This document shows, piece by piece, positions 6,391 to 41,100 of a DNA stretch of 64,000 bases (position 1 is the first letter of the stretch; each line of letters opens with the position of its first letter). The notes beneath the pieces were generated by a model. That model was not told the origin of the DNA and ran no database searches. It saw nothing but the letters and a program-made list of their open reading frames with translations. Source of the stretch: Ginglymostoma cirratum (Eukaryota); contig JAHRHZ010000002.1 in assembly GCA_024137785.1 (NCBI GenBank), forward strand, positions 23,221,408-23,285,407. The letters are read 5' to 3'. The position numbers and the translations under genes are program-made.

Positions 6391-6458
6391 GTAGTTAATG
6401 CAGTGGTGTCCTGGGACTTAATTGACTAACTTCCAATTACAACTAACTTTCTTTGTGT

Positions 6459-13857: not shown

Positions 13858-14133
13858 ATGGTCAGAGTATGGCGGCCTGCATTCTTCATCAAGTCACCAG
13901 GCGTCTGGTGCACTCCAGGAAGGCCTTTCTCAGCCTACTGTCCATTGCCTCAGCTGCCAATTCCTCCACTGAAACACACACTGGAACGCTACCTCCTGGC
14001 ACTGCAGCCTCTCGTGACCCCAGAAGAGCTGGAACAGACAAGGGAGATAGTGAGAGAGTTCAGTAGACCCCATAGTATTGGATCAAAACTACAGGACAGG
14101 CTGGAAAGGCGATCAAGAAGGACTGAAAACTGG
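13858..14133 (+). CDS. CRAT: CRAT-like coding exon A (MVRVW...RTENW)
   Basis: Acceptor cctag|ATG; donor TGG|gtacgt; 276 nt; LPQLPIPPLKHTLERYL. Confidence 0.92.
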
Positions 14134-17100: not shown

Positions 17101-20100
17101 CAGTCCCCACTCACCAGGCCTTCTCATCACATGGGCAGCTACCACAAACAATTCATTATGGTCTCCAATAGTAGCTATTCATTCTCCCAGGCTTACCTTT
17201 AACCATTCCCTTGTCTCTACAACTTTTTTTTCCCTCTTTGGGCTGCATTTCCACCTATCGTTGACCCCTCCCCCTTCACTCTACCCCTTCTTTAGCATCT
17301 ATACCAATATTTTCCCATCTACAATCAGTCCTGAACAAGGGTCACTGGACTTTGAAACATTAATTCAGCTTCCTCTTCACAGATGCTGCCAGACCTGCTG
17401 AGGTTTTTCCAGCTATTTCCATATTTGTTTCTGATTTTCAGCATCCACAGTTCTTTGATTTTTAGATTTAGTTTTGAACTTGATCAAAGACTGGGCATCC
17501 ACAGCCTTCCAGGTCAGAGAATTCTCAAAATTCACAACCTCCTAATGAAGAAATCTCCTCAACTGGCCCTAAAAAAACTACCCTACCATTATGCTAACAT
17601 AATGATTGTCTACAAGTATCGATGTTAATAATTCTTGTTTACTTGGGGAAAACGACAACCAAGATTGCAAACCAGAACAGCAATGATGTTCCTAACTTCA
17701 GCTTGTTCAGTGCAACTTAATGTCACTCCCTTACAACTGCAATTAAACTGTTTATTAAAGCTGATTTTCACCCATTATATTATTGATGTATAAAGTAAAA
17801 TATCCTGACAAGTCTTGCCACTAATTCACCTCCTGCATTTGTTTATATATTTAGATGTACAAGTTGATATTGGTGATGATGATTGAATGTTCCTTTGCTG
17901 TAATTGGGTTGCAATTCTGATTCCTTCCAGTCCCCGATCTCAGAGTAACTTAGCCACTTTGTAATGTTTCCTTTCCTTACTGTGATTCCTTTCCTCCCTC
18001 AGGTTTGCAGCTAAACTAATTGCTGGAGTTCTCGACTTCAAGTCTAAGGTTGACAGGCAAGTTCTCCCAACTAGCTCCATTGGAGTTTCCCAAAAGTCAA
18101 TGGATATCAATACAAGTGTGATTCCTGGAAAATGTGATATATTAAGTGTCTGATCCATGGACAGTGTAAGCAATGACATGTACACAACAGCCATTCGTTA
18201 TTTAAATTCAGGAAAATCTTGTGGAATTTGTCAGGCATTGCGTGGAGTAACATTCGGTCCTGAGCAGTTGCTTTCCTAGAAATATTAATAGATGCAGCAC
18301 AGATACAGGCTGCCATCCCATCAGGTCTGTGCTGGCTTTTTGAAAGAACTGTCTAATTTGTCTTGGTCCACTATTCTTTCCTCATAGCTGTATCAATTTT
18401 TCCGTTTTCACATGGGAAAGTGTGCAAACAAATAATGTTTTCATAGCCCTGACCCTTTTAGGCCACGTATTCTGCTTTTGTCCATCTGACTCTTTTTGTG
18501 TTTACTGATAAAATAACAAGACTCATTTGGTAATAACTGCAACTGGGAATGTAGGTGATTAAGACAAACACACTTTTTAAACAAAAAGGACGTATTGAGC
18601 AATAATGACTAAAATTCCAGAAGGCGAAGTTAAGAGATATTTTGCTGAAGTAAATAAGCAGCAACTATTTCCACTGTTAAGAGATCAGTGATCAAAGGGC
18701 ACAATTGGTAAAAGAACGGAAAGGGAGATAAGGAAAATATTTCTTACACAGTGAGCCAAATGATTAGTTCAGTCAAACTGCACAGCTGATTATAATCCAT
18801 CGAAATAACATTGCATCACATCGGTTGTGATTTTGAGAAATTTTGATCATCGGCGGCACAGTGGCTCAGTGGTTAGCACTGCAGCCTCACAGCGCCAGGG
18901 TCCCGGATTCGATTCCAGCCCCAGGTAACTGTCTGTGCAGAGTTTGCACATTCTCCCCGTGTCTGCGTGGGTTTCCTCCGGGTGCTCCAGTTTCCTCCCA
19001 CAGTCCAAAGATGTGCAGGTTCGGTGGATTGGCCATGCAAAATTGCCCATAGTGTTCAGGGGTGTGTGGGTTATAGGGGGATGGGTCTGGGTGGGATGCT
19101 TTAAGGGTCGGTGTGGACTTGTTGGGCCGAAGGGCCTGTTTCCACACTGTAGGGATTCTAATAATGAAGGCCAAAACAAGGAACAGGCATAAAGCATAAG
19201 CATGTACCTGACACAAAGGAAGAGGGTTGTGGTTGTTGATCATTCAGCTCCAGGACATTATTGCAGCAGTTCCTCAGGATTGTGTCCCAGGCCTCCACCT
19301 TCAGTTGCTTCATTAAGCTGCTCTTTCAATCACAGAGTCAGAAGTGGAGGTGTTTGCTGACAACTGCATAAGGTTCAGCACTGTCCACAACTCCTCAGAT
19401 ACTGAAGTAGTCGATGTGAAACTGCAGCAAAAACTGAACAATAGCCAGGATTAGGCTAACAAGTGGCAAGTAACATTTGTACTGCGCAAATGCAAAGTAA
19501 TGACTTTCTCCAAGAAGAATCTAGCCATAACCATTTGACATTCAATGATCTTACCATCACTGAATACCCCACTAGCAACATTAACCAGAAACTGAACTGG
19601 ACTAGCCATATAAATATGATGACTACAAGAGCTAGATCAGAGGCTAGGAGACCTGCAGTGGGTCACTCGCCTCCTGTCTCCCCAAATCCTGTCCACCATC
19701 TACAAGACAGAAGTTTAGGAGTGTGATGATATACTTTCCACTTGCCTGAATTAGTGCAGCTTCAGTAACCACACAAGAAGCTTGATACTGTCCAGGACAA
19801 AGCAGCTCACTTGATTTCCACCCCATCCACAAACATTGACTCCCTCACCACCAATGCTCAGTAGTTCAATATGTACTAGCTACAAGATGCACTGCAGAAA
19901 TTCACCACGGCAAACTTACCTCCGTTTCCATCAAGGAAGGGTAGCAGAGACATGGGAATGCCACAAGCTGCACATTCCCCTCCATCCTGACTTGGAAATA
20001 TATCATTGTTCCTTCAGAGTCACTGGGTCAAAATTCTGAAACTCCTGTCTGAATGGCATTGTGGGTCTACCGAATGGACTGCAGTGTCATAAGAAATTAG

Positions 20101-23100
20101 GTTACTGTCACCTTCTCCAAGTCAACTAGAGATGGGAAGTGAATGCTGGCTCAGGCAATGAAGCTCACAATTCATTAAATAATTTTTAAAAGATTAAAAT
20201 CATAGCATCGTAGTGCACAGAAGGTGGCCATTCAGCTTATCGTGCCTCTGCTGGTGATTTGAAGAAATGATCTAATTTAACCCCACTCTCCCCGCTCTTC
20301 CCCATGACCTGAGAATTTATTTCCCAATTCAAGTATTTAACCAGTCCTTGTTTCAAAGTTATGATTAGAAATGCCTGTATCACTCTTATGGTCAGCATTT
20401 TCCAGATCATCGCAGTTTACTGCATAAAAAGAAAATCAAACTTCTTGGTTCTTTGCAAATTATTTTAAACCTGCATCCAGATTCTAAATCTTACCTGTAG
20501 GCAGCTTTTTAGCCACATTTAGTACCATCCTATTCCTACAAGTTCCCTTCACATGGGTCTCTGTGTGGTTATGATTGCAGCTGATGGTAATAGTGGACAA
20601 GTCAGAAACCAGAATGAACCCTGGCTTAGTAGATCATATATTTAACTTTGGCAGTTAGTTACAGTGGTAGTTACTCGCTGAAACATACTCATACAATGCT
20701 GCAGATGTTCTTTAACAGAACATAAACTCGTTACACAAAAGGAAAAAACAACAATTCTAAATGTTTATATTTACGACGAATAGAAAAATCTTAAACAGCA
20801 AAACAAAATTTCAACTTGTTTCCCAACGTCATCTTTTACAGATACTCATTTCTATAGAAATTTCACTCTTATCTCTTTAAGTTTTACTTAACTCGTGCTT
20901 TCCTGCTTCTTTGAACTGTTGAGCCAATTTTACAATTTTTTTGAGTCTGTTTGTATGAATCTTTCACAATTCTAATGGTGCAGATTTTCTTTTGGTTGTA
21001 ACAACTTGTTGATTTCTATATGAACTCTCCTGGATTAGAAGCTTCACAAACTAAACACACTTCAGCTAGCATTATAGAGTGATAAAGTCATAGAGTTGTA
21101 CAGCACAGAAACACTCTTCAGTCCAACTCATCCATGCCAATCAGATATCCATATTAATCTAGTCCCATTTGGCCCATATCCCTCTAAACCCTTCCTATTC
21201 ATATACTCATCCAGATGCCTCTTAAATGTTGTAATCTTACCAGTCTCCACCACTTCCTGTGGGTGCTCATTCCATACTCGCACCACCCTCTGTGTGAAAA
21301 CGTTGCCCCTTAGGTCCCTTCTATTAGCTTTCCCCTCTCACCTTAAACCTATGTCCGTAATTAGTTTTGGACTCCCCTGCCCTGATATTCACCCTATCCA
21401 TGCCCCTCATGATTTTATAAACCTCTCTAAGATGTTCCCTCAGCCTCTGACGCTCCAGGGAATGCAGTCCCAGTCTATTCAGCCTCTCCCTGTAGTTAAA
21501 ACACTCCAACCCCAGCAACATCCTTGTAAATTTAAACCAAGAGGGAAAAGATTTAAAAAAAGAACTGAGGGGTGACTTTTTCATGCAGAAGATGGCGAGT
21601 GTATGTAACAAGCTGCCAGAGGAAGTGGTGGAGTTGGGTGAAATTACAATATCTAACAAGTGTTTGGATGGGTATATGATTAGGAAGGGATTAGAGGGAT
21701 ATGGGTCAAATGCTGGAAAATGAGACTAGGTAAGATAGGGGTGTCTGGTCAGCATGGACAAGTTGGACCAAAGGGCCTGTTTCCATGTTGTATGACACTA
21801 TGACTATCTCCAGCATCTGCAATTCCTTGTTTTGTTTTGCTAAGGTGACTGGTTCCATTGAACTGATGTGAAAAAAAAGATTTTCTGCACAGGCAAATTT
21901 GTTATCCCTTCTGACCTGAATTCTTTTGAACTGAACTGAAGTCTAAAGCCAAACTAATGGTCTCCGGTTATTTGTAAATTCAGCAGAATAAGCCCTCATC
22001 CATTCACATCGTTGTTATCTTGGCAAGAACTTGACTGAAGGTACTTGCATTTGTGAAAATTATGTATTTCAGTCAATGTTTCAAATAATTTTCTAACCCC
22101 TTTATTAGAAAAAGTCTTCACAGAACTTGACAAAATCCATCTGTCTCTACTTTAAAGCCTAAATCCCAAGTGAAAATATATGGCTTATCTTTTGTCATAG
22201 TTATCAGTGTAAACTTGTTGGATTCCCTAAGATTGATGGTAGCTAGAGAGTCTAGTGTTTGCTTTTTTTTCTTAAAAATTAAACTATTTTCCACTACTTT
22301 GGAGACAGTCCAAAGACAGTTCACTAGGTTGATCCCCAGAATAGAAGGATTGATTTATGAGCAAAGATTAAATAGGTTGGGACTCGACTCACTGGAGTTA
22401 AAAGGAATGAGAAATTATTTCATTTAAACATAGGATTTTTAAGGGGCTTGACAGGTAAATGCTGAGAGAATGCTTCCTCTCATGGGAGAGTCTCGGACCA
22501 GAGAGTATAGTCTCAAAATAAAGGGGGTGCTGATTTAAGACTGAGATGGTGAGGAATTTCTTCTTTCAATACTGTGAGTCTTGCCACAGAGCGCTGTGGG
22601 GGGCAGGGTCATGATGTATATTTAAGGCTGAGAGAGATAGGTTCCTCTATTCATCCAGAATCTATCAATTCAAAAGGCAGGAAAGAGGATGTGAGGAATG
22701 TCAGATGAGCCCTGATTCTATTGAATGGTGGAACAGGCTTGAGGGGCCAAATAGCCTACTCCTGTTCCTATTTCTTGTGGTCTTTCATCTCATGGTTTGT
22801 TTGGTTATTATTGCAAGCCGTTTCAATTTGCTGCTGTCTCTATGAACTCCCTCTCTGTTTGTTTTTAGAAAAACTCTTCCAACTGAGTACATAAGAGGCA
22901 AACCTCTCTGCATGGATCTGTACCCCAGAATCCTGTCATCTTGCCGCATCCCAGGACCCAAACATGACACTTTGATAAACTATGGATTCACGAGGAGCCC
23001 ACCAACTCATGTCACAGTGGTCCGCAATTTCCAGGTAAAGTCCAAGAATGCCAACACAAATACTAATGTAATACTAATCCTATCTGAAACTTTCCATCCT

Positions 23101-26100: not shown

Positions 26101-29100
26101 TAGCATTGAATTTAAAGAAACACTGTCCAAACCTTCAAAGATTAGTGGTAGGTCAGAAGGTTAGGCAGACTTTAAGAATAAAATTGTGAATGAACTCCCA
26201 TTTCTTCCCTTTCTTTTAGCTTGTTACATTCTGTTATGATGTCCTCCTGCCCCCACTACCACCAACATTCCAGTGGGACTATCTGTCCTTTCAAGTCCAG
26301 CAAGTAGACACACCATTTGTTCTGCCATTTTCACATTCCAATCACTTAATCTGAACTATCAACATCATGTTCTCCACCAACACCTGATACCCACTACCCC
26401 CACACATCCCCTCCTCACCCCAACTGTAGCATAAATGCTGCTCCCTCCGCACTTCACTTCAGCTCTGATGAAGGGTCATCTAGACTCAACGTTAGCTTGT
26501 TCTCTTTCCATGGATGATGCCTGACCTGCTGTGATCTCCAGCATTTGTTGTTATCTATCATAGAAATGTGCTAGAATCCAAAATTAAGAAGGTTTTATCT
26601 GGTAAAATATCTTAGAAAATCACAATTTGATCAGGCATAACAATCATGGTTTTGTGAAAGGGAAATCATGTTTAACTAATCTGTTTGAGATTTTCTGATG
26701 AGTAAAAAGTGGATAGAAGGGAGCTAGCTCGTTGATATCGTTTACTCCTATTTCCAAAAACCATTTGTTAAAGTGCCACAATAAAGGTGACTGCAAAAGA
26801 GAAGAGCATGTGGCTCAGATATGTAAAGTTAACATATTAACATTGAATAAAGAGTTAATCAGTTAACAGGAAGCAGAGAGTGGGGATAAGTGGGTCATTT
26901 TTTAGATGGGTATGCTATTAATGGAGTATCACAGGGATCAGTGTTAGGTCTTCATTATTTACGATGTATATCAATGATTTGGATGAGGGCATCAAATGTA
27001 TGGAGTTTGATGAACAAGAATGGTAGTATGTTGTCAAGAAGAGGAAGGGAGTCTACAAAGGGATGTAAACACATTAAGCAAGTGGGCAAAAAATGGCAGA
27101 TGGAGTAAAACATGGGTAAATGTGAATATGCCCACTTTGGCAAGAAGAGTAAAAAATCAGTATAATAATTAAACAGAGAGAGGTTGCAGAATTTGATGGT
27201 ACAGAGGGATTTTGATTCTCGTGCTTGAATCACATGAAGTTGGCATGTAAAGTTAATAAGTGATTAGGAAGGCAAATGAAATGTTGTTGTCCAAGGGCAA
27301 GGAGTTGAGCATATAAATGTATGGAAGTTTTATTACAGCTCTGAGGGTCAGTACTACGTGCAGCTGTCTTCCCCAGAAAGTAATGGAGGCCTAGTCTTTA
27401 AATTTATTCAAGTCTGAGTTAGATAGATTTTTGATATACAGAGGTTCAATGGTGCAGACACGAAAGGTGAAAGCACAGCCAGATCATCCATGATCTTCAG
27501 AAATAGTGAAACAAACTCAAGGTGCCAAATGACCTACTCTTGACCCCAAGTCCAAGGTTATTTTGAGGCTCTGTTACACATTGTAAGTCCATGGGCTTTA
27601 TTATTAGTCCTAAGGCAGTGTTGCTGTGTAACTCAGAGGTTTTTTGATTATCCTTGGACTTCGTTACAGTGTAATTCTGTGTAGGTTACTGGTTATCCTG
27701 ATACTGCATTGCAGTGTAATTCTTGGGGGTTCATTGGATTTTCTGAGACTATTACCGTGTAATTCTTTAGGGCTTGGTTGATTCTTCTTTGCCCACAGTG
27801 TCTGTACTTCTGATACCCAGTGGTCCCTAAGTCTAACAGGTGTGACATAAGGTGTGTCATTTAAATGTAAAGGTTGGATTTTTATCTAGTGCCATACGGG
27901 TCTGAGTTTGTGAGGGAGTTTAATGATTAATTTGAAGCCTTTCTGGAGCCATAATTCTTTTACAAACTTTATGAAAGACAGAGAAACAGTGTTTTTCTGG
28001 ACTGATAATGGGAATTTATTTGTACTGTGAGAGATTTAAGATCAAACAGAGAAAACATTAAAAAGCATTAGCTTGCTTTTGATTTTAATCAGTCAGAATT
28101 TATTTTTGCTGAGGACAAAATCCCATTACTTGAAAAGCTTTTGGTTTTCATTCACAAAAGGCTCTGGAGTTAGATATGACAGCAATTTCAGCTGGAGAAA
28201 TGAGTTAGTATTGAACAGTTAAGAAATTGGTCATTTTTGTGTGAGAGTTTTGAAATTCCAGGCCAGTAGTTTTTGATTAATCCTAAAGGGATTATTTGTA
28301 GCTGGGAAAGTCTAAATTTCAATGTGACAATAATCAAGACTGAGAATTGTAAAAATAATTTAATCAACCCTTTGGGTGTAATAGAGATGGGAACACTCCC
28401 TCTAGTGTTTGAATACTGCAAAGAGATGGTGTTTTGGATAGTTGGGATTGTATTTTTATTTTCAAAATATTTCAAATTGCGTTATGTGTAAACAACTTAG
28501 TTTGTTCTATTTTATCTGATTTCTTCTGCATAATGAACTTCTGATTTGTTGTTAAAACTAAATCTGTAGCATTGCATGTTTGTATTTTGTTGACAGACCA
28601 CCTTGTTAACTAAAACAGTAATATGATAGATCAAGTCAGATTTCCATTTGGGATCTAACCTGTCCTGTAGTAACATCAGCTGGGACCATAACAAAGTGTT
28701 GTTGCTGTATTAAAGTGTAATTCTGTGGAGTTTACTGGTTATTCCAGCCTGTGTTACAGTGTATTATGTAAGGTTTATTAGTTTCTCCTAGGCTTTGTAA
28801 CAATACAAGTGTTTGCATTCCACTGTTCTTGTTGATAGTCACTACTCATCTCACTTGCACAAACTCTTTCTCCAGTTCTTTCACTTGGATGTCTATAACA
28901 GCGATGGCTCCCCTCTAACTGTGGATCAGATTCACATGCAGCTGCAGCAAATCAGGAATCTGTCATGGAAAACAGATAAGGAGCCATTGGGCGTGCTAAC
29001 CAGTGACCATAGGAACACTTGGGGACAGGCCTACAATACCCTCATGAAAGGTAGAGTCAAACAATGCGGTGTTGGAGAAGGCATAAACCCATTTGGTTTT

Positions 29101-32100
29101 CAGGCTAAATTCTGAAAAGCTGCTGAATGTTGTTATAATGTCCTGCTTCAATTTTGTTTTCTATAAAACATCCACAACTTATCTCAACCCAGAGTTGTTT
29201 AAGACTGATTCAGTTTTGTCATGTGCACCACTCAGTGAGGAATGTGTTGGCATTAGGTAAGCGTAACAGAAGGTAAAGGCATTAACTAAACATCTTTTAC
29301 TAAAAGACAAAGCAGGGATAGGTCTGACTGTGCCCATGAAGGAGGTTTAGGACATCTAACCCATCGTGTCAGGGAATATTATCCAAATATAGAAAATCCA
29401 GTTTTTGAAGATAGTTTTCTATCCTATGATAAGAAAAATGTGTTGCTGCTCACCTTGTCTGAACATTCACCATTATGCATGGAGCACCGAGTAATTTGAT
29501 TTTGTATTTGATATCTGAATATTGTGTATGAGTGTTGCATTCTAGAATTGTGATTTCTGTCTCTTACAAAAGAATTTGTAAATATACACAGTCATTACTA
29601 ATTCCTGATTGTTCTTGTTCTTCTGCTGGTTGAACCATAGAATGGTAGCAACAAAGGAGGAGGTCATTCTGCTGTCTGAGCCTGTGTCAATTCTCTGAAT
29701 AAGCAAATTAATTTTCCCAGCCTCTTCTGCTCTTCCCCTGTAGCCCTGTAAATGTTTTAACCTTAACTGTCTGTACAATTACTTTGTGAAATTCACAATT
29801 GAATCTGCCAACACTCCTGGGTAGTATGTAAGAGATCCTAATCATGACATGTAATTAAATAAAAAGTATTTATTTTGCCTTTGGTTTGTTTGTCACACTT
29901 GTCAATTTAATTTGATGTCTTCTGGTTCTTGATCCTTCTGACCATGGGAACATTTTCTCACTATCTGCTTTGTCCAAACCATGATCAAATCTGCTCTCAA
30001 CTTTCTCTTCTTGGAAGAGAACAATCCTAGCTTCTCTCATTACTGAGGTCGCACATCTCTGGAACAATTCTTCTAAATTTTTTTCTGCACCCGTTCAAAG
30101 CCTTCACATTTTTCCTAAAACGAGGTGGTCAGAATTTGACACAAATGGCAGTTGTCGCCAAACCAGAGAATTACAAAGGTTCATCATAACTTACTTACTG
30201 TTGGTTGTATTTTATCATGCGTGCATTGAAGACGATATGGCAGGAATGTGTTGCACTGTGCCTCACTTGTAGGAACTAGGGCTGTAGGAAAATTGAACAT
30301 TTCATTTAGAAACAGAATTACTATGTATTGAATACAGTTCCCTTCCATTACAGTACTTTGCATTGGATACTGTTTATTTATATATTATATACAATGTTTT
30401 AAAATGATAAATGAATTGTAAAGAGTAGTCCTAGAGAATTTAATTACCAGTAATGGATGAAGAACAGGGAGGCACAACTTTAAAATGAAGGCTCGGTCAT
30501 TCAGGAAGAAATCAACACACACTTCTTGAAAGGCAAGTGGAAATGGAAAATCTTTCCCTAACATATCCATATTACACCTCCCCTTCCCCCAACAAAGTCA
30601 ATTGAATGTTTCAATGCCTAGAGTAGACTTTTATTTCATAAGGATAGCAGGGAAAGAGAGGTAGGTAAAAGGCATAAAAATGGATTTGCAGTCTACACCA
30701 CCCATGATCTGGTTAAATACAGGAACAGGCTCAGGTGGCTGAATGGTCTCTTCATGTCTCTTTCCTTCCTTTCAGTAAGGTTTATACTCTTTACTATGAT
30801 CTGTAATGCACCAATTGTTATTATCCTCAGACAAACTGAACAGAGAATCTGTACGGGCCATTCAGAAGAGCATTTTCACACTGTGTCTAGATTCTCCAGT
30901 CCTGAAGATCTCGGAGGAGAAGTATACAAGCCGCATGGCAGCTCAAATGTTGCATGGAGGAGGAAGCTACTCAAACAGTGGCAACCGATGGTTTGACAAA
31001 ACTCTGCAGGTAGGAGACACTGAGACAGCATGCTGAACTCATTCCAGCATTTAATGATCTAAGAAGAGGTGCATTTGCACAGTACCATATTAAGAGTGCA
31101 TTGAGCGTTTAGATGTGTCACTGTTCACAGTGTTAAAAGTATCAAATTCCATTTCCAATACAACACTGAAAGATACATGCTGTAGGAACTCAATGTAGTT
31201 TATGCATGAAATGTGCGAAATTTACATGGTTGGTACAGGCCTGAGGGGTACACAAATGAATACTGTCTCTTTGACCTTTCACTGGTGACAGATTTTAGTT
31301 CCTCTGCCATGCACGTGATTTGCACCAGATGCACACATTCGACACAGTGAGTCTGGTGCTGGGGCATGTAGATTCTCTTACCTCAGATACTGGGAAATCT
31401 GTCGTGAGTAACTCACCTCCTGACTGCTCACAGGATAATGTAGGAATAGGATGGTATACACCCCTGCTTGTCCAGATAGGTGCAGTTCCAACAGTGCTCA
31501 AGGAGTTCAAAACCACACAGCGTAACGCAGACCACTGAACTGGCTTCTTATCCACCACCTTTTAAGGTTTCCTATCATCCTCCAATCTTATACAGTCACT
31601 GCAGTGTGCACTATAAATAATATGCATTACAATAAATCACCTACGCTCTTTTAACAGCACATTCCAAGCCTGTGACCTCTACCTTCTTGTGTAACCAGTC
31701 CTCCAAAAGGGAAAACTCCCTTTGTAGCAGCACCACTAGGAATAAGTAAAAAATGCAGTCCTTGCGAGTGATGTTCACATCCTAATCAGTAGCAATAATT
31801 CTTAAAAAGATAGTTCTTCATAGACTGGAGCAGGGGGATATCTTTTTGAGACTAAAATGGACGTTTGGGGGAAATAATTGGCACTTTGTAACAAAGCTTG
31901 TGTAATTTGTGTAACTCTGCCACAATCAGAATGACAATGTGCTCAAATCTACATGAGAATTCCCATGTTGTTAGGATCGCAGTAGATCTTTTCATGATCT
32001 CTGCTAAGAAAAAGCAACTTGGCCTCTTCTCTCCCTGTGATAGCAGATGTAAATTAAATAATCAAGTTTTACTTGCATGTATTAATGCAAAATTCAGTCA

Positions 32101-35100
32101 GCTATGTCTGCAATCGTCCTTGTATCTGGCTACTTAAGCATATCTCTTTGTGTTACAGTTCATTGTTGGGGAGGATGGATCTTGTGGTGTTATATATGAA
32201 CAGTCTTCTGCAGAGGGCCCACCCATTGCCACCATATTGGACCATGTTCTTGATTATTGGTAAGAAAATGCATATAGTACAGAGTGAAGTCCTTTTTTTT
32301 ATTTAAAATGTTGTTTATTTTCTAAATATGTCCTTTTATTTCTCCTCTTTTACCTTTTTGTTTTCTATCTTTTGAGGAAGCATGTGGATGGCTAAGGATC
32401 ATCTCAATGCACAAGACTGACAGTTATTGTTGATACTGGAGACATGAATATTATGTGTTTGTTTCTTCCTGCTACTAAAATAACTTCTGCCAAATAGGGT
32501 TGAGGACTCCATTGGGATAGCAACACAGAAATGTCATGCTTAAAGCTCTGTAAATTAGTCAAACTTTTATTAGGGTTCTGACAGGATAGAATGCTGGCAT
32601 ACTGTAACTATTGTGTAATAAATTAAGAGAATTTATTAAGTAACAAAGCAATACTTAACAACTAGGTGATATTTTACAAGTTACACATGGCCAAGTCTCT
32701 CCCGAGCATCTTGGACACTGACCAACATTTAACTGTGGTCTGATTTGACTTCCTTCTTCTGTTTCTTTCTTCTTCGATCTTTTTTCTGAGAACCTTTGTA
32801 ATTGTACACTAAATCCTTTCAGACAGTACGTTTTATCCCAATCTAACTTCAGTATACAGGAATTCTCTTACCATATTTGGTAAAAGCATCTGACTTACAA
32901 CATTCATAGCAAAATCAATATGATTGATGTTCCGTTGATGCTCCATTCAAAGTTACATCAACAGACCACAATACTTTATCAATAGCTACATCCCAAACTA
33001 CAATAAAGAAAGTTAGCATGCAGACACATTACTGGGTTTATGTTGTTCTTTACACTTCGAGTCTTTAGTTTTCAAACAGAAGTATGCAGACAGAATGACC
33101 ATTTATGTTTAGCCCAATGTATGCAAAGGGTTGGCCATTGTAGTAGCAGTTAACTCCTTGCTTGCCCAAAGACCATACAAACTTGTGCAAAGCATAGTTT
33201 CTAAAATTCAAAGCACTAGGAGTAATACATTAAAAACCCATATTTCAGACAACTTGTAAGTATCCTTGGCATTTTTTCATCGTTTTACCAAGCAGGAAGG
33301 AAAGGTATGTATTTATGTAGCACCATTCATGATCACAAGATAACCCTAAATGTTTTACAGCCGATGAAATAGTTTTGAAGTTAGTCACTGTTACAGTGCA
33401 GAATTTGTAGAAACCAGATTGTCCATAGCAAAATCCTACAAACGGCAGAGAATCTGTTTTTGGTGAAGTTAGTGGAGGGTACGCATCGACGCGAAAACTA
33501 GGCATAATTTACCTGACTGTCTTAAAATAGATCTTCTACATCCACCTAGTAGGTCAGGTGGATTCTTGGTTTAAGTCTCAATAAAAAGATAGTATCCCTA
33601 ACAATGCAGTATTCCCAAAATATGCACTGAAATGGCAGCATTAATCTTCATGCTCGGGCCCTAGAATGGGATTTGAGCTTTCAACCTCCCTACTTAAAAG
33701 TAAGAGTACTAAAAACTGAGCCACAGCCAATACGTCCTAATCCCAGTCCACATGTATTAAAGTACCTCTATTCATCGCTCAGTAGCGTGAGACATGGATA
33801 CTCAATTCTGAATAATTGACATGCAATAATGAGTATAAACTGGATCCAAATTTTCTCCAACTGTTTATAATTTGACACATATAATTCAATTCAATCTGCT
33901 GGTATACTGACCACCCCCAAGTTGTTTTAAGCAGCATTGCCAGTAAACAGTTTTCCCATTTAGTCAGGAGTGATGTAAAGGAAAAACTGTGATTTTTTTT
34001 TTTTTTTCAAATTGTTTTTCAAAGTCAGTTTAATCTGGTAAATATAATTAACTGATTTACAGAAGAAAGGGGTGGAAAACCATATATGTCATATGGTTTT
34101 TTTCACAATTAGTCTCACCAACCTAAATAGGAGAGTGTATGTTTAAGCTCCCGGGTAGAGATAGTGAGAAGGGATGGAACACTGAATCTAAATGTCTGTG
34201 ATTATAGATTTTGATCAGAACTTGTTGTAAGGCAAGTTGCAAAATGAGCTCCATTTCCCACTGAATCTGGTGAAAATAACACATCCACTGACGATGATAA
34301 CAGAAACTGTAACCAGTTCCCAAATGCAGGCTGACTTAGGGAATGAGGTACTTAGTATGACTAATATTCAGCATTAACTTTGTAAATTACATGACTTTCA
34401 GAAGTGATTGACTTTTGTTTTGTAAATCAATGCTCTTGTTTATAAAGGATAAAATGTCTAATTCATGTGTTGCATTTATAGTAAGGACCCGGATACAGTT
34501 CGAGCTCCCATGATTCCACTGCCTTTACCAAAGAAACTTTATTTTTACATCACTCCAGAGATTAAGAGAGATATTGAGCATGCCAAACAGAACCTGGACA
34601 TGTGAGTATTGTACCTGCCAGTTATGTTTATGGGCATTTACAAGATTGGATGAAAGGAACATAAAAATTGTACGTGTCTATTACCTGTGATTCGGCTGTT
34701 GGTTTATATTACTTAATCCAGTATTCATATTCCTTCTCTCAGATAATGGTTTCCTTCCAACTTGGTCAATGGGGTAAAGACAATCCCGAATGCACACATA
34801 CCTTCAAAATGAGGAGATTTATTCTGTGTATCTACAGTCATGAAATTTTAACTGTGTCTATAGAAAACATGTTTACAATTTTGCCATGCTCTGTGGAAAT
34901 CCCATCCTTGGGACATCTGCCCAGAATTGGTTAGGTAGAATTTTAACTTGGTTTCACTTCTCTTTTCAAAGCTATTAGCTTGAAATTGGCCAAACTTGTG
35001 CAGTAAGTTGCAAAGTTTTAAGTGTGAATTCTGTTCGATAAAATTCACCATTGATTCAGGATGAATTGGTCAGCATTGGGAAGTTTGATAAATTACCCCA

Positions 35101-38100
35101 CTTCCTGGCTGTCAAGGAGGCTTTAAGAAAATAAGCGATTTCTTTTGGGTGTAAGGAGAATAGGCACATTTAAAAGCATCTAAATGCATTTTTCCATTTC
35201 ATAATTAGGCTGTGAGTGTCATTGGCAAGGCCTGCATTTGTCACATATCCATATTTGTCCTTGAGAAGTTGACTTTGAATTTCTGTTGTCCATGTGGTGT
35301 TGTTACATTTACAGTGCTATTAGGGAGGGAGTTCAGCTACAGAGAGGAAAATGTCACTGGGTGACTATGGAGGGAAATGTGGAGGTGATGCTGCCCTTAC
35401 ACTTCCCAGTGGTAGAGGTCACAGGTTTGGAAGCTACTGTCAAAGTAGCCTTGGCAAATTGCTGCAGAGCATCTTGTAGATGAGACATAGTGCTGTAACT
35501 GACTGTCAGTTATGAAGGAAGTGCATGTTGGAAGTGGTGGATAGTATGCCATTCAAGGAGGCAGTTTTGCCCTGGATGTTCTTCAGTTTCTTGAGACTAT
35601 ATTGTGCATTCATCCAAGCAAGTGTGAAGTATGCAAGCACAAACCTGACTTATACCCAGCAGATGGTATGCAGGCTTTGGGAACCAATTGTTGAGCTACT
35701 CAGCACAGAATTCCCACCCTTGGACCTGTTCTTGTAGCCACTATATTTGTGTGTTGAGGTTTTGGTCAAGGTAACCCCAGGATGTTGGGAGTGGGTGATT
35801 AAGCAATGGTAATGGTATTGAATGTCAAGGAATGATGGTTAAATTCTGCCGTGTCAATCATGGTCTTGGTCTGGCACTTGTATAACCCAAAGGTTACTTC
35901 TTATTTACTAAGAAATATATAGTTTAACTACCTAATAATTCTGTACATGTTTCTAAAAAAGCTCATTTTCTGATTTATAATTAGATTACTCACAGATGTG
36001 AAACATATACTATGCCTCAAAGTGCTTTTCTTTTGTGATGAACCATTTTCAGCTGTATTAATATAATTTCACCAAGTTACCACTTTAATCTAGTCAGGAA
36101 CATTTTAAAAATAAATTTTGCAAACCAAGGTGTACAGTTGAGTTTGAGCAGAAACTTGAAGATATATGCTTCAAAATTTATTCCTGATCGTGCAGAATGC
36201 AGAAACTTTATGCCGTGTATATCTTTATGACATTTCTGATGTAATAAATTATTTCTGAAAATTTGAGAGTTGCTTTAAGATCAATATTTGCCATCGTGAA
36301 TGGTGACTGACTTGATTGAATTTCTCCAGGTTTTTTATTCAACCCCTTAGTTAGAAGATAAGTACACGCATGCAGGCAGTACTTTAGATGGATAAAGGAC
36401 ATGCCTGGAAAGTTCCAGAAGCGTTTCTCAAAAAAAGTGTTGTATTTCTGCAAATTCAGAAAGTTATGCGAAGATCAATTCCATCAATAAAGCATGGAAG
36501 CTACACAAGGATCTCTTAATGTACTGGTTCTGATGGAAACTTAGGCCTTAATTGTATCCACCTAATCCTATTCTGAGCATTTTGTTCCTAGACAAAGTTA
36601 TTGTGGAACCATAAAATAGGACTCAGCTGAAATTGTACTTTTGTTACAGTTTAGTTAATGACTTGGACATCAGCTGCTTCACCTATAGGAACTTTGGCAA
36701 GAACTTTCCCAAACTACATGGAATAAGTCCAGACTCCTTTGTACAAATGGCACTGCAGTTGGCGTATTTTAGGTACGTACTCCATGATGGAACAAAACAT
36801 TTCAAGCTGTCATTCTCATGATGTTGAATTTAATCATATACAGCTTTTACGAGTTCACTCACTGTTTTGATACACTCAGTAATTAAAGTTAATACAAATG
36901 CTATCGGAATTGGATGACATTTAGGATCTGTACGAATACTCTTCACCCTGACTTGTTCCTGATTAATTGTGCCTTGTATTAGGCTTCTCCAGAGCCTCTT
37001 GTTTCTCTTTACATTTTACATTTGTATGAATTATTTTGGAGGAACTTTTAAGACCTTACTGAAGGTCTTGTTTACTATCTTGTTGTTAAATTCATCTATG
37101 TTGTTTACCTCAACTCCTGTCTTTGATAGAATAGTTAGAAAGTGGATATTGCTATTAGTTAAAAAGTCACTCTGAATTCCCATTGGATTTATTAGTGACT
37201 ATCTTGCTCGTAGTTCTGGTCTTCTGCTCAAACATAATCATCTCCCTTCAATTAACTCTTGTAAATCTTTTTGTAATCTGGACACCCTTTATCAGAACAA
37301 CACTTTGCCTTCTCTAGCACAAACAGCTCTGGTTTGTTCAATTTTTTTTCACCTTTATTCCTCTCGCTCTCATAGCATCAATTTTTCACATTTTCTGAAA
37401 TGGGTGGCCCTCACTGGCCAAAGTTGCACACATTGGAAATGGGGTGCATAAATAATTTGTTTCAACGTGGATGTTTAACTTCTATTTCAAATTATCTTTT
37501 CAATTCAGCAACAAATGCAGCTGCTCGTTCTGTCTGCTTTTGACAATCCATTGCATTGGTTTCTCTGACATTTATGGCTATTCCACAGATACATCCATCC
37601 ATTGTTAGTTTAAAGTATTGATAACGGCATATGCAACAAATGTCATATCAATTGCTATATTCAGATACATGGCTGTGCCTTTGTTGTTGTTTCATTCCCA
37701 TCCAGATAACATACATTTTCTTAACTATGGCAAGAGAAACAGAACTAAAGCATCTAAATAAGTGACCTTTCATGAGACACTAATTTAACCTGAATAGCCG
37801 CAGCACATTATGGGAATTCTCATTTGCCAGTTTAAAATTTTGAGGCTTTATGAACCTGTTGGCAGATTATAAGCACAGTAAGTTCTTCAGGACCACATTT
37901 CCTAGCACTGCCCTTTGAGGGTAGAGTAAGCCTTCCTGTCTGGTAACAATGGCATGCAGCTCCAAACAGCTGAAACATGAAGTCTGCATGTTAACTCCCA
38001 TGTAGAAATGTACCAAGATGTATTTGGAAGTCATGTTTCAGAGCCAGATAGCAATTGTTTTTAACATGGGTTCAGTTTGAAAGAATGTTTTTATTAGTTC

Positions 38101-41100
38101 ATGGAATGTGGGCATCACTGGCTAAGCAGCATTTTTTGCCCATCCCTAATTGCACAGAGAACACTTAGCAGTAAGTCAAATTGGAGTCCCATATTGGCCA
38201 GACCAGGTAAGAATGGCAGATTTCCTTCCCAAAATGACATTAGTGAACAAGATCGATTTTCACAACAATCAACAGTGGTGTCATGGTCTCTGTTAACTGA
38301 GCATTTAGTTACAGCTTTTTATTGAATTCAAATTTCAGCATCTGCCATGGTGATAGAATTTGAACCTTTATCCCCAGAACATTCAGCATGAATAGTCCTG
38401 TGATATCAACTCCCCTCAACATCGAATGCAATTTTAATCTGACGTAAACCCAAAATCATCTTGGTACCAAGTATAAAATAACAGAGATAGTAGGAACTGC
38501 AGATGCTGGAGAATCTGAGATAACAAGGTGTAGAGCTGAATGAACACAGCAGGCCGAGCAGCATCAGAGGAGCAGGAAGGCTGACGTTTCGGGCCTAGAC
38601 CCTTCTTCGGAAAAAGGGTCTGAAGACCTTTCTGAAGAAGCGTCTCGGCCCGAAACGTCAGCCTTCCTGCTCCTCTGATGCTGCTTGGCCGGCTGTGTTC
38701 ATCCAGCTCTACACCTTGTTATCTCTATAAAATAACAGCCTTGCTTTGAGTTAATGTATTCTGTGTTTAACAGAATTAGCTGTTGTTCAACCATGCCTAT
38801 TACTCTTACTTCTATTGCTCTTTGCTGCTACTTACAGGATGTATAAGGAACTCTGTGCCACATGTGAGAGCGTTTCGATGAGAAACTTCCATCTAGGACG
38901 CACTGATGTAATCCGATCATCATCTACAGATTCCTTGGAGTTTGTGATAAGCATGGATGACCCAGAAAAGGAGGTATTTTGTCATTGAAAATGTGTTTAT
39001 CGCTAGCTCTGAAATTAATTTCTCAGCCTGTCGGATAACAACAATAGAAAATTGATGGCTTTTGAAATTTGAATCATTGCAGGAGATTAAATTGAGAGTG
39101 GCCTTGAATTTCTGTGTATGGTATAGAGTTGTGCATTTTCATTCTTTTGGTATCATGCAATCAAGTCTTTCTCATTTAATCTCTTGGCATTAACACTTTA
39201 TTGCCAGGTCAGGTGTATCAAGGTCTCATTAAAGCAAAACTCCTCCAAAAATTTAGCTCCAGCCATACTGTGTATGGATTTGAGATTTCTTATTAAAGCT
39301 GTCTATCTGGTCAATTTGTTTATTTAAAAATGATCTAGACTTGGAGTCTGCTTGAAGCTGGTTTGGGAATAGCTGAACCTATTTTCCACTGGAGCACTAG
39401 TCACTGAGGATTTTCATTCACTGGCCCCGATGATTACGGATTCCAGTGATGACTCTCACTGGGGAATGTCATTCATTAACTCTAATACCAATCCTACTGG
39501 GGACCATCACTCACTGAGCTCAGTACTGACTCTTCCTGGGAACCTCTCTCACTGACACCAGTTACTGACCCTCCCTGGGGAATCTCTCTTACTCACCCTT
39601 GCTGGGAAACATTATTCACTGACCCTACTTGCAGACCCTCACTAGGGAATCTCTCTCACTGACCCAGTCACTGAATCGCACTGAGACATCTCAGTCAGTA
39701 ACCTCCGCACTGACTCTCACTGGGGTCTGCACGCTCTGATTGCAATGAGATTAAGAGAAAATAGTATATTTCAGGTGTAAGATCTGATTAAGTGAAGACA
39801 AATTGATCATACGCAGTTCTGTCTGACATTATGGACATTAATTACACAAGAAATTCCTTTACTCTTAACATGCTACAACATATGTGATCACAAATCAACC
39901 TTTTTTCCAGTAACTTTTTATTTTACTTTGAGTAATTTACCAATATTAACATAATGTAATTTTCTTCACCTTGAATAACAGATAAACCAGAAGAGAGCAG
40001 CACTAGGGAAAGCTGTTGATTGCCACAGTGCTTACACTGACATGGTAAGATGATGTATGGAGAACCTGTACTATTAATCCTCATGAATCAGGCTGCACTG
40101 CTCTTCCATTCATGAGTTTGGCTTTTCTTGTTGCGTTTGTGATCCATTTTTGTTGGTCAGTCCCACAGTCGGTGTGATTTCAGTTAAAGTTATTGGACTT
40201 GAAAAGATTGTTTCTTATACAAATATCTCCAAGTAGAAATGAGTGGGATAATGGTTGATTATAAACTGTGAAAGAAAAGTTAAGATTCGGTGAAAGCAGG
40301 TTCAGAACCTCAAGTTATACACATGAGATTTCTGAAAGAATTACATGAATCTGCAGAAGTGACAGTTAAGACTCATTTGAGGGAATTTGTGAGTAGTGAT
40401 AAGGAAGAATTGAATTTCAGGGAAGGTGGAGAGTACGATTGATAATTTTTATATTTCAGTTCGGAAAATAGCTGTTAATCACTTTTCACATTATCACTGG
40501 GATGTTAGTCTGCTCAGAACCATGAAATTAAGTAAACCTTATTATTGTGATAAGTGAAAGCCACAAGAAGGATTATATAATCAATGCTGTTGGTATACAG
40601 ACAGTGGTAGAAAGTAATAATGCCCAGGATATTTAATGCAATTTATAGCTTAAGTATCTGGTTCTACAATTTTCTATATTATTAAGCCTTGAATTATATG
40701 GATACCTGGTCAGGATCATTAAAGCAGTGAGTACTCATTAGACATCTGTGTAATTTGAATAGAATGTTTAACTTTCAATAATAATCTTTTGTTTTACTCA
40801 CAGGCACTGAAAGGATTGGCAATTGACAGACATTTGCTGGGCTTGAAGCTCCAGGCTATTGAAGAGGGTCTTAGTGTACCAGAGATCTTCATGGATACAT
40901 CTTTTGCAGTGGCAACACACTGGAGACTCTCAACAGGGCAGGTAGGTTCAAGTTGGAACAGGGAATGATTTCCATTTTCATAGCCACCTGAACTGTCAGT
41001 AGCATCATCACATAGCAGTCACTCGCAGATATGCTTCATTGTCTAAGAGTCCTGTTAACATGTTCCAAACAGTAAAATTCGAGTACTTTGTTTCCTAGTT

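What the first reader, a model, noticed from the sequence alone, without database searches (positions are those of the whole stretch)
32159..32259. Intact CRAT paralogue lacks the catalytic histidine (YEH->YEQ): candidate pseudoenzyme
Seen: the exon reads FIVGEDGSCGVIYEQSSAEGPP, and codon CAG at 32201-32203 gives Gln338. Known: in choline/carnitine acyltransferases this position is the essentially invariant general-base His (CRAT H343, in YEHAAAEGPP), and losing it abolishes activity. Seen: all 13 exons splice into one open 621-aa frame with good splice sites and no stops, while the intronic repeats are heavily decayed. Inference: the gene is under selection but is not a working acetyltransferase. 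It may be a non-catalytic acyl-CoA binder, sensor or scaffold.
Basis: partly seen in the sequence, partly recalled or inferred. Interest (0 to 1): 0.88.

Follow-up and report, generated by a model that had tools for sequence, protein, structure and literature searches.

The report
Ancient catalytically dead CRAT paralogue
This shark gene is an intact copy of a vertebrate-wide sister gene of carnitine acetyltransferase. It lost the enzyme's key catalytic residues and its peroxisome address tag more than 400 million years ago yet has stayed strongly conserved, so it probably binds the substrates without transferring acetyl groups.

Summary
Window 32159-32259 (+) encodes FIVGEDGSCGVIYEQSSAEGPPIATILDHVLDY, and CAG at 32201-32203 aligns with the catalytic His343 of solved CRAT structures.

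The same gene also replaces Tyr452 with Cys and the oxyanion Ser554 with Gly (STS to STG).

The gene model needs correcting. It has 14 coding exons and 631 codons, not 13 and 621. A 30-nt first exon lies at 8649-8678, and one intron is GC-AG.

This is not a shark oddity. It is the orthologue of the database genes 'carnitine O-acetyltransferase-like' and teleost 'cratb'. The Gln/Cys/Gly state is shared by sharks, rays, coelacanth, caecilian, paddlefish, bichir and most teleosts. Lungfish, squamates, turtles and gar keep Gln and Gly but vary at position 452. Canonical CRAT in the same taxa keeps His/Tyr/Ser.

The clade keeps the CoA-binding lysines, most carnitine-binding residues, an alignment to human CRAT without a single gap, and a basic N-terminus. 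It has lost the C-terminal peroxisomal signal.

Best reading: a selected, mitochondrial pseudoenzyme that binds ligand but does not catalyse. I found no paper reporting this.

The parts
8649..8678 (+). Coding exon 1 (ATG ATG ..., MMLTASTRLL).
   Evidence: Exact match to the first 10 residues of the Rhincodon orthologue P0429. Donor is TTG|GTGAGT.
13858..14133 (+). Coding exon 2. It holds the rest of the basic, acid-free N-terminal region and the start of the acyltransferase domain.
   Evidence: Pfam PF00755 positions 1-61. AG acceptor and GT donor, phase 0.
15121..15239 (+). Coding exon 3
   Evidence: PF00755 positions 62-94. Splice sites.
18003..18056 (+). Coding exon 4, followed by a GC-AG intron (donor CAG|GCAAGT at 18057).
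   Evidence: Sequence. Only this junction restores the CRAT-length FKSKVDRKTLPTEY.
22869..23034 (+). Coding exon 5
   Evidence: PF00755 positions 120-174..
28876..29050 (+). Coding exon 6. It carries the clade-specific SWKTDKEP motif.
   Evidence: PF00755 positions 174-237.. Clade-specific fixed changes at CRAT positions 237-244.
30831..31009 (+). Coding exon 7
   Evidence: PF00755 positions 232-292. This exon was the query.
32159..32259 (+). Coding exon 8, the catalytic-site exon of the finding.
32201..32203 (+). CAG codon. Gln348 of the 631-aa protein, at the place of CRAT His343.
34482..34601 (+). Coding exon 9
   Evidence: PF00755 positions 338-367..
36650..36772 (+). Coding exon 10. It holds the conserved CoA-binding lysines (equivalents of CRAT K419 and K423).
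   Evidence: PF00755 positions 368-410. Site table.
38838..38973 (+). Coding exon 11. The Cys codon at 38863-38865 replaces CRAT Tyr452. The Thr465 equivalent is kept.
39982..40044 (+). Coding exon 12 (63 nt)
   Evidence: Found by local alignment to teleost orthologues. Sequence and splice sites.
40804..40941 (+). Coding exon 13. The Gly codon at 40936-40938 turns the STS motif into STG (CRAT Ser554). The Arg518 equivalent is kept.
44628..44843 (+). Coding exon 14 with the stop codon. The C-terminus is ...SGQAA, with no peroxisomal [AS]KL signal.

Best explanation
The gene at 8.6-44.8 kb (+) is the orthologue, in an orectolobiform shark, of the vertebrate 'carnitine O-acetyltransferase-like' gene, which teleost annotation calls cratb. 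This gene is a sister of canonical CRAT that arose before cartilaginous and bony vertebrates split.

Shown:
- The protein keeps the whole two-domain CRAT architecture.
- It keeps the residues that hold CoA and most of those that hold carnitine, and it keeps the short-acyl gate Met564.
- The three residues that perform or position the chemistry are replaced: the general base His343 by Gln, the oxyanion Ser554 by Gly, and the carboxylate ligand Tyr452 by Cys.
- The C-terminal peroxisomal signal is gone, while a basic N-terminus resembling a mitochondrial presequence remains.

Inferred:
- The protein cannot deprotonate carnitine or CoA, so it is inert or nearly inert as an acetyltransferase.
- It works in mitochondria as a binder, sensor or buffer of acetyl-CoA/CoA and/or (acyl)carnitine.
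- Gln348 probably still forms the hydrogen bond to the ligand that His forms in CRAT.
For: Catalytic changes in the window:
- His343 to Gln, Tyr452 to Cys and Ser554 to Gly are each shown by an alignment to solved CRAT structures. The codons were re-read.

Gene model:
- 14 exons and 631 codons, with no stops and consensus splice sites.

Orthology:
- The window's exons are 99.0% identical to the Rhincodon 'CRAT-like' protein and 90-97% identical to those of ten other shark species.
- They are 69% identical to the coelacanth and caecilian Gln-type proteins, against 59% for shark canonical CRAT.
- In the tree, gnathostome Gln-type proteins form one clade (SH-aLRT 99) that follows the species tree and is separate from canonical CRAT.

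Site states in a 69-row alignment:
- Position 343 is Gln in 31 of 36 gnathostome clade members. The others are Ala (salamanders), His (a cypriniform and a mormyrid) and Pro (a bird).
- Position 554 is Gly in 35 of 36. Position 452 is never Tyr.
- All 21 canonical CRATs and all 5 invertebrate outgroups have His/Tyr/Ser.
- K419, K423, E347, T465, R518, T553, Q555 and M564 are kept.

Where the losses fall:
- The three catalytic residues are among only 32 of 344 canonical-invariant positions with 10% retention or less.
- Sixteen substrate-binding positions are retained at 0.84, against a background of 0.77.

Constraint:
- Shark-shark identity is 90.5% for this gene and 88.8% for CRAT. Shark-coelacanth identity is 71% against 80%.
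- The alignment to human CRAT 1nm8 runs 585 residues without a gap.

Targeting:
- Of 21 canonical CRATs, 20 end in [AS]KL, as do three of the five invertebrate outgroups (a fourth ends PKL). None of the 41 clade and cyclostome proteins does. Their N-termini are basic and nearly acid-free. Zebrafish Cratb was already noted to lack a PTS1 (PMC8919083).

Expression of orthologues:
- Full-length 631-aa skate and 634-aa newt proteins sit on 2.2-4 kb assembled contigs, which looks like mRNA.
- Tilapia cratb was measured by RNA-seq and qPCR in liver (PMC11463132).

Role of the residues in CRAT:
- H343 as general base, K419/K423 on the CoA 3'-phosphate, and the D430-E453 pair are described in PMC11852590.
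- The roles of Ser554, Tyr452, Thr465 and Arg518 come from my knowledge of Jogl & Tong 2003 (Cell 112:113), which I did not read here.
Against: - No activity, binding or localisation measurement exists for any member, as far as I could find.
- Cypriniform and mormyrid orthologues carry His again at 343. The pocket may therefore still be close to catalytic competence, and some members may have activity.
- Retention of binding residues is not significantly above the background of other canonical-invariant positions (P = 0.20).
- Expression in this shark was not shown.
- dN/dS could not be computed because no orthologue coding DNA was at hand.
Confidence: 0.7

Rival explanations
1. The protein is still an enzyme. 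It would use another base, another mechanism or another acceptor, for example an amine or another small quaternary compound. Gln348 would only orient the substrate.
For: - The substrate tunnels are conserved and Gln itself is kept in 31 of 36 clade members, so the pocket is in use.
- Fifteen positions are fixed to a new residue across the clade, including a 237-244 cluster. That fits a new function rather than mere loss.
- His returned twice, in cypriniforms and in a mormyrid.
Against: - No clade-specific gain of a His or another obvious base appears among the fixed changes.
- Position 343 also tolerates Ala (salamanders), and Arg in the cyclostome relatives, which have little chemistry in common.
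- The new Cys at 452 is not universal. It is Ala/Thr in squamates, Ser in gar and turtles, and Asn in lungfish, so it cannot be an essential nucleophile.
- The oxyanion Ser is lost in every gnathostome member.
- From memory, not checked here: His-to-Gln at the homologous histidine of choline acetyltransferase abolishes activity (Carbini & Hersh 1993).
Confidence: 0.17
2. The gene is a decaying or unexpressed duplicate in this shark, and the open frame is there by chance or recent origin.
For: Expression in this species was not demonstrated. The introns are full of decayed repeats.
Against: - A 1,893-nt frame across 14 exons has no stop, and all splice sites are intact.
- It is 99% identical in protein to Rhincodon, 90-97% to ten other shark species, and about 85% in the alignment between shark and skate orthologues.
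- The clade follows the vertebrate species tree, so the gene has been kept for hundreds of millions of years.
Confidence: 0.02
3. The CAG codon is an assembly or sequencing error for CAY (His).
Against: - All 12 listed shark orthologue proteins (11 species, independent assemblies) match this exon at 32-33 of 33 residues, and the nine chondrichthyan rows in the alignment all have Gln.
- So do 127 fetched full-length proteins with the Gln/Cys/Gly combination.
- Two further catalytic-site changes lie in other exons of the same gene.
Confidence: 0.01

Closest known systems
Canonical carnitine O-acetyltransferase (CRAT; solved structures 1NM8 human, 1NDB/1NDF mouse)
   Same: - Same Pfam domain end to end (PF00755 positions 1-573).
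- Alignment over 585 residues without a gap; the window's exons are about 55% identical to a mammalian CRAT and 59% to shark CRAT.
- Same CoA-phosphate lysines (K419, K423), E347, T465, R518 and the Met564 short-acyl gate.
- Same kind of basic N-terminus.
   Different: - His343 to Gln, Ser554 to Gly and Tyr452 to Cys.
- No C-terminal [AS]KL peroxisomal signal.
- Fifteen clade-wide fixed substitutions at positions that do not vary in CRAT.
- A separate clade in the tree.
Database genes 'carnitine O-acetyltransferase-like' (for example Rhincodon XP_020372675.2, Stegostoma XP_048375993.1) and teleost 'carnitine O-acetyltransferase b' (cratb)
   Same: - The window gene is an orthologue of these: 99% identical to Rhincodon, 64-65% to basal teleost cratb and 69% to the coelacanth and caecilian proteins.
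- It shares the Gln/Cys/Gly state and the missing PTS1.
   Different: - Nothing essential differs.
- The records name them as ordinary acetyltransferases. The papers I found treat cratb as a peroxisome or lipid-metabolism gene without remarking on the missing catalytic residues.
- Cypriniform cratb, and so presumably zebrafish cratb, has His at 343, unlike this shark.
CPT1C, the brain paralogue of carnitine palmitoyltransferase 1 with little or no catalytic activity, regarded as a malonyl-CoA sensor (from my own knowledge; not tested here)
   Same: Both are paralogues in the same superfamily that kept the fold and ligand binding while giving up the metabolic reaction. It is the nearest precedent for how this protein might work.
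   Different: - CPT1C keeps the catalytic His and is restricted to mammals and some tetrapods.
- The gene here has lost the His, the oxyanion Ser and a carnitine ligand. It is much older, and no mammalian member turned up.

Membership tests
Choline/carnitine O-acyltransferase superfamily (Pfam PF00755) | Full-length two-domain acyltransferase domain | tested here: met
   Twelve exon pieces hit PF00755 colinearly, covering positions 1-453 and beyond. The 99%-identical Rhincodon orthologue covers profile positions 1-573 of 574 at E = 1e-192. It aligns to 1nm8 without a gap.
Choline/carnitine O-acyltransferase superfamily (as active enzymes) | Catalytic general-base histidine (CRAT His343) | tested here: not met
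   Gln, encoded by CAG at 32201-32203. Gln in 31 of 36 clade members in the alignment.
Choline/carnitine O-acyltransferase superfamily (as active enzymes) | STS motif with the oxyanion-stabilising serine (CRAT Ser554) | tested here: not met
   LSTGQ at 40927-40941. Gly in 35 of 36 clade members.
Carnitine acetyltransferase (CRAT) proper | Carnitine carboxylate ligands Tyr452, Ser454, Thr465 and Arg518 | tested here: inconclusive
   Tyr452 is Cys. Ser454, Thr465 and Arg518 are kept in the shark. Actual binding was not measured.
Carnitine acetyltransferase (CRAT) proper | CoA 3'-phosphate lysines K419 and K423, and the D430-E453 pair | tested here: met
   All four are present in the shark orthologue and in nearly all clade members. 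Their roles are described in PMC11852590.
Carnitine acetyltransferase (CRAT) proper | C-terminal PTS1 ([AS]KL) that gives dual mitochondrial and peroxisomal location | tested here: not met
   The window protein ends ...SGQAA. None of the 36 clade members has a PTS1, against 20 of 21 canonical CRATs.
Carnitine acetyltransferase (CRAT) proper | Groups with canonical CRAT in a tree | tested here: not met
   It falls in the separate CRAT-like clade (SH-aLRT 99). Identity is 59% to shark CRAT against 69% to the coelacanth and caecilian CRAT-like proteins.
Vertebrate 'CRAT-like / cratb' orthogroup | Placement in the clade and near-identity to annotated members | tested here: met
   The Rhincodon protein was used as a stand-in for the window protein in the tree, because the joined exon model was not built.
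Vertebrate 'CRAT-like / cratb' orthogroup | Gln343, non-Tyr452 and Gly554 combination | tested here: met
Pseudoenzyme | Catalytic residues lost while the sequence stays under constraint | tested here: met
   This is constraint at the protein level only.
Pseudoenzyme | No catalytic activity in an assay | not testable with these tools
   Needs recombinant protein and a DTNB or radiometric assay.

The most novel reading that the evidence does not exclude
Vertebrates ancestrally carry a second, mitochondria-only CRAT that was turned into a non-catalytic binder or sensor of acetyl-CoA/CoA or acylcarnitine before cartilaginous and bony fishes split. Its Gln is kept because it still holds the ligand. 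No mammalian or frog copy was found, the one bird copy seen is highly divergent, and His returned in carps and a mormyrid. Zebrafish would then be an atypical model for it, and most fish, reptile and shark annotation of 'cratb / CRAT-like' as an acetyltransferase would be wrong.
Probability: 0.45. Interest if true: 0.78.

Novelty: new variant of a known kind. Interest (0 to 1): 0.62.

Why it matters
- CRAT buffers mitochondrial acetyl-CoA and is central to metabolic flexibility. A second CRAT-shaped protein that has kept its substrate tunnels but lost its chemistry would be a natural 'substrate trap' or sensor in that pathway. It has been conserved from sharks to lizards and most fishes.
- It would also be a new pseudoenzyme in the carnitine acyltransferase family, next to CPT1C.
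- Genome annotation and fish transcriptomics currently count it as an acetyltransferase, in 'peroxisome' pathways, although it lacks both the catalytic His and the peroxisomal signal.
- Natural variation at the site gives ready-made material for experiments: Gln, with Ala in salamanders, His in carps and a mormyrid, and Arg in lampreys and hagfish.
- No mammalian copy turned up, which may explain why it has gone unstudied.

Tried and rejected
Steps that led nowhere:
- Aligning the 13 in-frame exon pieces with one full-length orthologue, to use as a profile query (A1). MAFFT scattered the fragments, so the alignment was dropped and never searched.
The organisms behind the unnamed GC-rich exon fragments P0006 and P0008 (YEQAVVDAQPVAT) stay unknown, and no orthologue DNA could be fetched for dN/dS.
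There is therefore no read-level check of the codon, the splicing or expression.
- A search with the hagfish protein returned mostly canonical CRATs. It was useful as an outgroup set and revealed the coelacanth, bichir and caecilian Gln-type proteins.
- Searches of earlier scan findings by words found nothing.
- Two literature look-ups for the roles of Ser554, Tyr452 and Arg518 found nothing usable.
- The joined spliced protein was not built or sent to any search. Searches were made exon by exon by reference, and the annotated Rhincodon protein P0429 stood in for the window protein in the tree and in the whole-protein searches.

Readings considered and rejected:
- Assembly error (see rivals).
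- A shark-specific decaying duplicate (see rivals).
- Cys452 as a new catalytic nucleophile. It is not conserved in squamates, turtles, gar or lungfish.
- The claim that the loss of His predates the cyclostome split. The free tree puts the cyclostome Arg-type proteins beside the clade (SH-aLRT 97), but an AU test does not reject cyclostomes lying outside both gnathostome clades (p = 0.41). I date the loss only to before the chondrichthyan-osteichthyan split.
Full report
**The observation.** Window 32159-32257 (+) translates to FIVGEDGSCGVIYEQSSAEGPPIATILDHVLDY. The bases at 32195-32209 read TAT GAA CAG TCT TCT, so CAG is at 32201-32203. The exon lies between a ...ttacag acceptor and a gtaaga donor. 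A phmmer search against all PDB chains aligns the 33 residues end to end, without gaps, to human and mouse carnitine acetyltransferase (1nm8, 1ndb and others; E about 1e-10). The Gln lies opposite the His of YEHAAAEGPP.

**More catalytic-site changes.**
- The exon at 38838-38973 reads ATCES where CRAT has ATYES, so Tyr452 is Cys.
- The exon at 40804-40941 reads LSTGQ where CRAT has LSTSQ, so Ser554 is Gly. A first-stage note on this window (s1-879351) had seen the same change, and I confirm it.

**The gene model.**
- Twelve stop-free pieces between 13.9 and 44.8 kb hit Pfam PF00755 in colinear order.
- A 63-nt exon at 39982-40044 was found by local alignment to orthologues.
- A 30-nt first exon at 8649-8678 (MMLTASTRLL) was found because the annotated shark orthologues start with exactly these residues.
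- The donor of exon 4 is GC in a consensus CAG|GCAAGT. Only this junction gives the CRAT-length sequence.
- In all there are 14 coding exons and 1,893 nt, which is 631 codons plus a stop. There are twelve GT-AG introns and one GC-AG intron, every acceptor has a pyrimidine tract, and neither the exons nor the six split codons contain a stop.
Its Gln338 is therefore Gln348.
- All searches with window sequence were exon by exon by reference. The scripts only checked phases, split codons and per-exon translations.

**What the gene is.**
- A whole-library phmmer search with exon 7 brought in partial proteins from sturgeon and trout that also read YEQ.
- A search with the trout protein returned about 120 teleost 'carnitine O-acetyltransferase b' (cratb) proteins. 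Nearly all have YEQ and Cys at 452. Cypriniforms and the mormyrid Paramormyrops read YEH.
- A search with a hagfish relative returned mainly canonical CRATs, 109 of 119 with YEH/STS/Tyr. It also returned Gln-type proteins of coelacanth, bichir and a caecilian.
- A search with the caecilian protein then gave the whole clade:
  - sharks: Stegostoma, Rhincodon, Chiloscyllium, Hemiscyllium, Scyliorhinus, Carcharodon, Cetorhinus, Heterodontus, Heptranchias, Mustelus;
  - rays and skates: Narcine, Mobula, Rhinoraja, Leucoraja, Pristis, Amblyraja;
  - other fishes: lungfish, gar, bowfin, paddlefish;
  - amphibians: salamanders;
  - reptiles: many squamates and turtles.
- The window's 615 in-frame exon residues are 99.0% identical to the Rhincodon protein, 96-97% to other carpet sharks and 90-93% to other sharks. 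The window therefore comes from an orectolobiform shark.
- The exons are 69% identical to the coelacanth and caecilian Gln-type proteins, but only 59% to the canonical CRAT of sharks.

**Phylogeny.**
- I built a maximum-likelihood tree of 69 proteins. Rhincodon P0429 stands in for the window, and the outgroups are a hemichordate, a tunicate, a brachiopod, a cephalopod and a spider.
- The tree separates canonical gnathostome CRAT (SH-aLRT 93) from a gnathostome CRAT-like clade (SH-aLRT 99) whose internal order follows the species tree.
- Five lamprey and hagfish proteins sit beside the CRAT-like clade (SH-aLRT 97). An AU test does not reject placing them outside both clades (p = 0.41).
- The duplication and the loss of His are therefore older than the split of cartilaginous and bony vertebrates. 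Whether they are older than the cyclostome split is open.

**Site states on mammalian CRAT numbering.**

| Position | CRAT-like clade | Canonical CRAT and outgroups |
|---|---|---|
| 343 | Gln in 31 of 36 gnathostome members; Ala in two salamanders; His in a cypriniform and a mormyrid; Pro in a long-branch bird protein; Arg in all five cyclostome proteins | His |
| 554 | Gly in 35 of 36 | Ser |
| 452 | Cys in most; Ala/Thr in squamates; Ser in gar and turtles; Asn in lungfish; never Tyr | Tyr |

- All 21 canonical CRATs and all five outgroups have His/Tyr/Ser.
- W102, E347, K419, K423, S456, T465, R518, T553, Q555 and M564 are kept in nearly all clade members.
- Of the 344 positions that are at least 95% invariant in canonical CRAT, only 32 keep the canonical residue in 10% or fewer of clade members. 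These 32 include all three chemistry residues and the last two residues of the peroxisomal signal.
- Sixteen substrate-binding positions keep the canonical residue at 0.84, against a background of 0.77. That is not significantly higher (P = 0.20).
- Fifteen positions are fixed to a different residue across the clade, with a cluster at 237-244 (the SWKTDKEP motif of exon 6).

**Constraint.**
- Among sharks the protein is as conserved as canonical CRAT. Rhincodon against Heptranchias is 90.5% identical, and the CRAT pair is 88.8%.
- Over deeper splits it has changed about 1.4-1.6 times as much. Shark against coelacanth is 71% versus 80%.
- The Rhincodon orthologue aligns to human CRAT 1nm8 over 585 residues without a single gap, and it covers the Pfam model from position 1 to 573 of 574.
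- This is not a decaying gene.

**Targeting.**
- Of the 21 canonical CRATs in the set, 20 end in AKL or SKL. So do three of the five invertebrate outgroups, and a fourth ends PKL.
- None of the 36 gnathostome clade members or the five cyclostome proteins does. The window protein ends ...SGQAA.
- Their first 35 residues hold 2-7 Lys/Arg and almost no Asp/Glu, as mitochondrial presequences do. This is a composition argument, not a prediction by a dedicated tool.
- A zebrafish peroxisome inventory had already noted that Cratb has no PTS1 (PMC8919083).

**What is known.**
- The review PMC11852590 describes H343 as the general base, K419/K423 as ligands of the CoA 3'-phosphate, and the D430-E453 pair as structural.
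- The roles of Ser554 (oxyanion) and of Tyr452, Thr465 and Arg518 (carnitine carboxylate) are from my memory of Jogl & Tong 2003. So is the report that His-to-Gln at the homologous His of choline acetyltransferase kills activity (Carbini & Hersh 1993). Neither paper was read here.
- Full-text searches for 'cratb', 'carnitine O-acetyltransferase b', 'carnitine O-acetyltransferase-like', and 'carnitine acetyltransferase' together with 'pseudoenzyme' found only expression lists and the peroxisome inventory. None mentions the missing catalytic residues.
- Tilapia cratb is expressed in liver and responds to hypoxia (PMC11463132).
- The gene is therefore annotated, but its dead active site appears to be unreported in the library I could search. 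Subscription journals are largely missing from that library.

**How it most likely works.**
- Shown: the fold, the CoA-binding lysines, most carnitine ligands and the short-acyl gate are kept. The general base, the oxyanion Ser, one carnitine ligand and the peroxisomal signal are lost. The Gln itself is conserved.
- Inferred: the protein enters mitochondria and still binds CoA/acetyl-CoA and/or (acetyl)carnitine, with Gln348 hydrogen-bonding where His did. It cannot start the transfer, so it acts as a binder, buffer or sensor. CPT1C is thought to work this way in the same superfamily.
- My confidences: the gene is functional and selected, about 0.95. It is inert or nearly inert as a carnitine acetyltransferase, about 0.8. 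The ligand-binding non-catalytic role, about 0.55.
- The main rival is a changed chemistry or acceptor. It is kept alive by the conserved pocket, the clade-specific fixed changes and the two returns to His. It is weakened by the tolerance of Ala, and of Arg in the cyclostome relatives, at 343, by the universal loss of the oxyanion Ser, and by the absence of any gained base.

**What could not be done.**
- The look-up of sequencing runs listed DNA-like holders. It also listed several runs guessed to be RNA that hold 8-13% of the words of a stretch that is 10% exon. That is suggestive, not proof.
- Expression of orthologues is supported only indirectly. Full-length skate and newt proteins sit on 2.2-4 kb assembled contigs.

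**Verdict.** This is the shark member of an old, vertebrate-wide, well-conserved CRAT sister gene with a dismantled catalytic centre. It is a new variant within a known kind (a pseudoenzyme paralogue of a metabolic enzyme). The gene is already annotated, but its nature apparently is not. Interest is 0.62.

Noticed in passing
window 57651-58070, 60859-61161 and about 61544-61729 (+): A neighbouring butyrophilin-like gene downstream of the CRAT-like gene. It has an Ig V-set exon (E = 1.6e-13), a butyrophilin-type Ig-C exon (PF22705, E = 1.3e-23), and a following ORF with a hydrophobic stretch plus a basic stop-transfer that looks like a transmembrane exon.
   Followed up: partly
window 18057-18062: The intron after exon 4 has a GC donor in a perfect CAG|GCAAGT context. 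A GT-only exon finder would mis-splice this exon. The Stegostoma isoform X2 record (P0406) differs from the window exactly in this exon (4 of 17 identical) and carries an extra N-terminal insert.
   Followed up: partly
proteins P0275, P0276, P0151, P0277, P0472 (lampreys, hagfishes): All five cyclostome CRAT-family proteins retrieved have Arg at the catalytic His position, lack Tyr452 and lack a PTS1. No His-bearing cyclostome CRAT turned up. Either it was missed, or cyclostomes have no canonical CRAT.
   Followed up: partly
proteins P0223, P0232, P0242, P0243, P0244, P0252, P0255, P0258, P0265, P0416 (cypriniforms) and P0256 (Paramormyrops): In cratb of carps, loaches and a mormyrid the catalytic position is His again, while Cys452 and Gly554 stay. 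On the tree this is two independent returns. Zebrafish is a cypriniform, so it is probably atypical for this gene.
   Followed up: partly
proteins P0395, P0455, P0456 (Ambystoma, Pleurodeles, Lissotriton): Salamander orthologues read YEA, with Ala at the catalytic position. No frog orthologue appeared among the best hits, although frog canonical CRATs did.
   Followed up: no
protein P0078 (Morphnus guianensis, an eagle); fragments P0006 and P0008 (unnamed, GC-rich): A bird 'CRAT-like' protein sits on a very long branch next to turtles. It has Pro at 343 and gaps at K419/K423, so it is either degenerating or badly modelled. Two GC-rich genomic fragments of unknown origin read YEQAVVDAQPVAT.
   Followed up: no
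proteins P0045, P0152, P0054 (Pampus argenteus, neighbouring locus tags PAMA_008209 to 008212): Divergent CRAT-like genes in a pomfret, with neighbouring locus tags that suggest tandem copies. They read NFSH/NASH instead of YEH (Glu to Ser, His kept) and have also lost Tyr452 and the STS motif. One of them sits within the canonical teleost CRAT clade on a long branch. This looks like a separate, younger case of active-site change.
   Followed up: no
window 43219-44127 (+); also 6422-6930 and 16322-17400 (+): Long stop-free stretches inside introns and upstream that look like decayed retroelements. The first has a weak reverse-transcriptase match (RVT_1, E = 0.0014). The other two share a CxxCG..YIGET..RL..R..EH motif but have no Pfam hit.
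   Followed up: partly
Nothing was laid, and the places were left alone afterwards.
   Followed up: no
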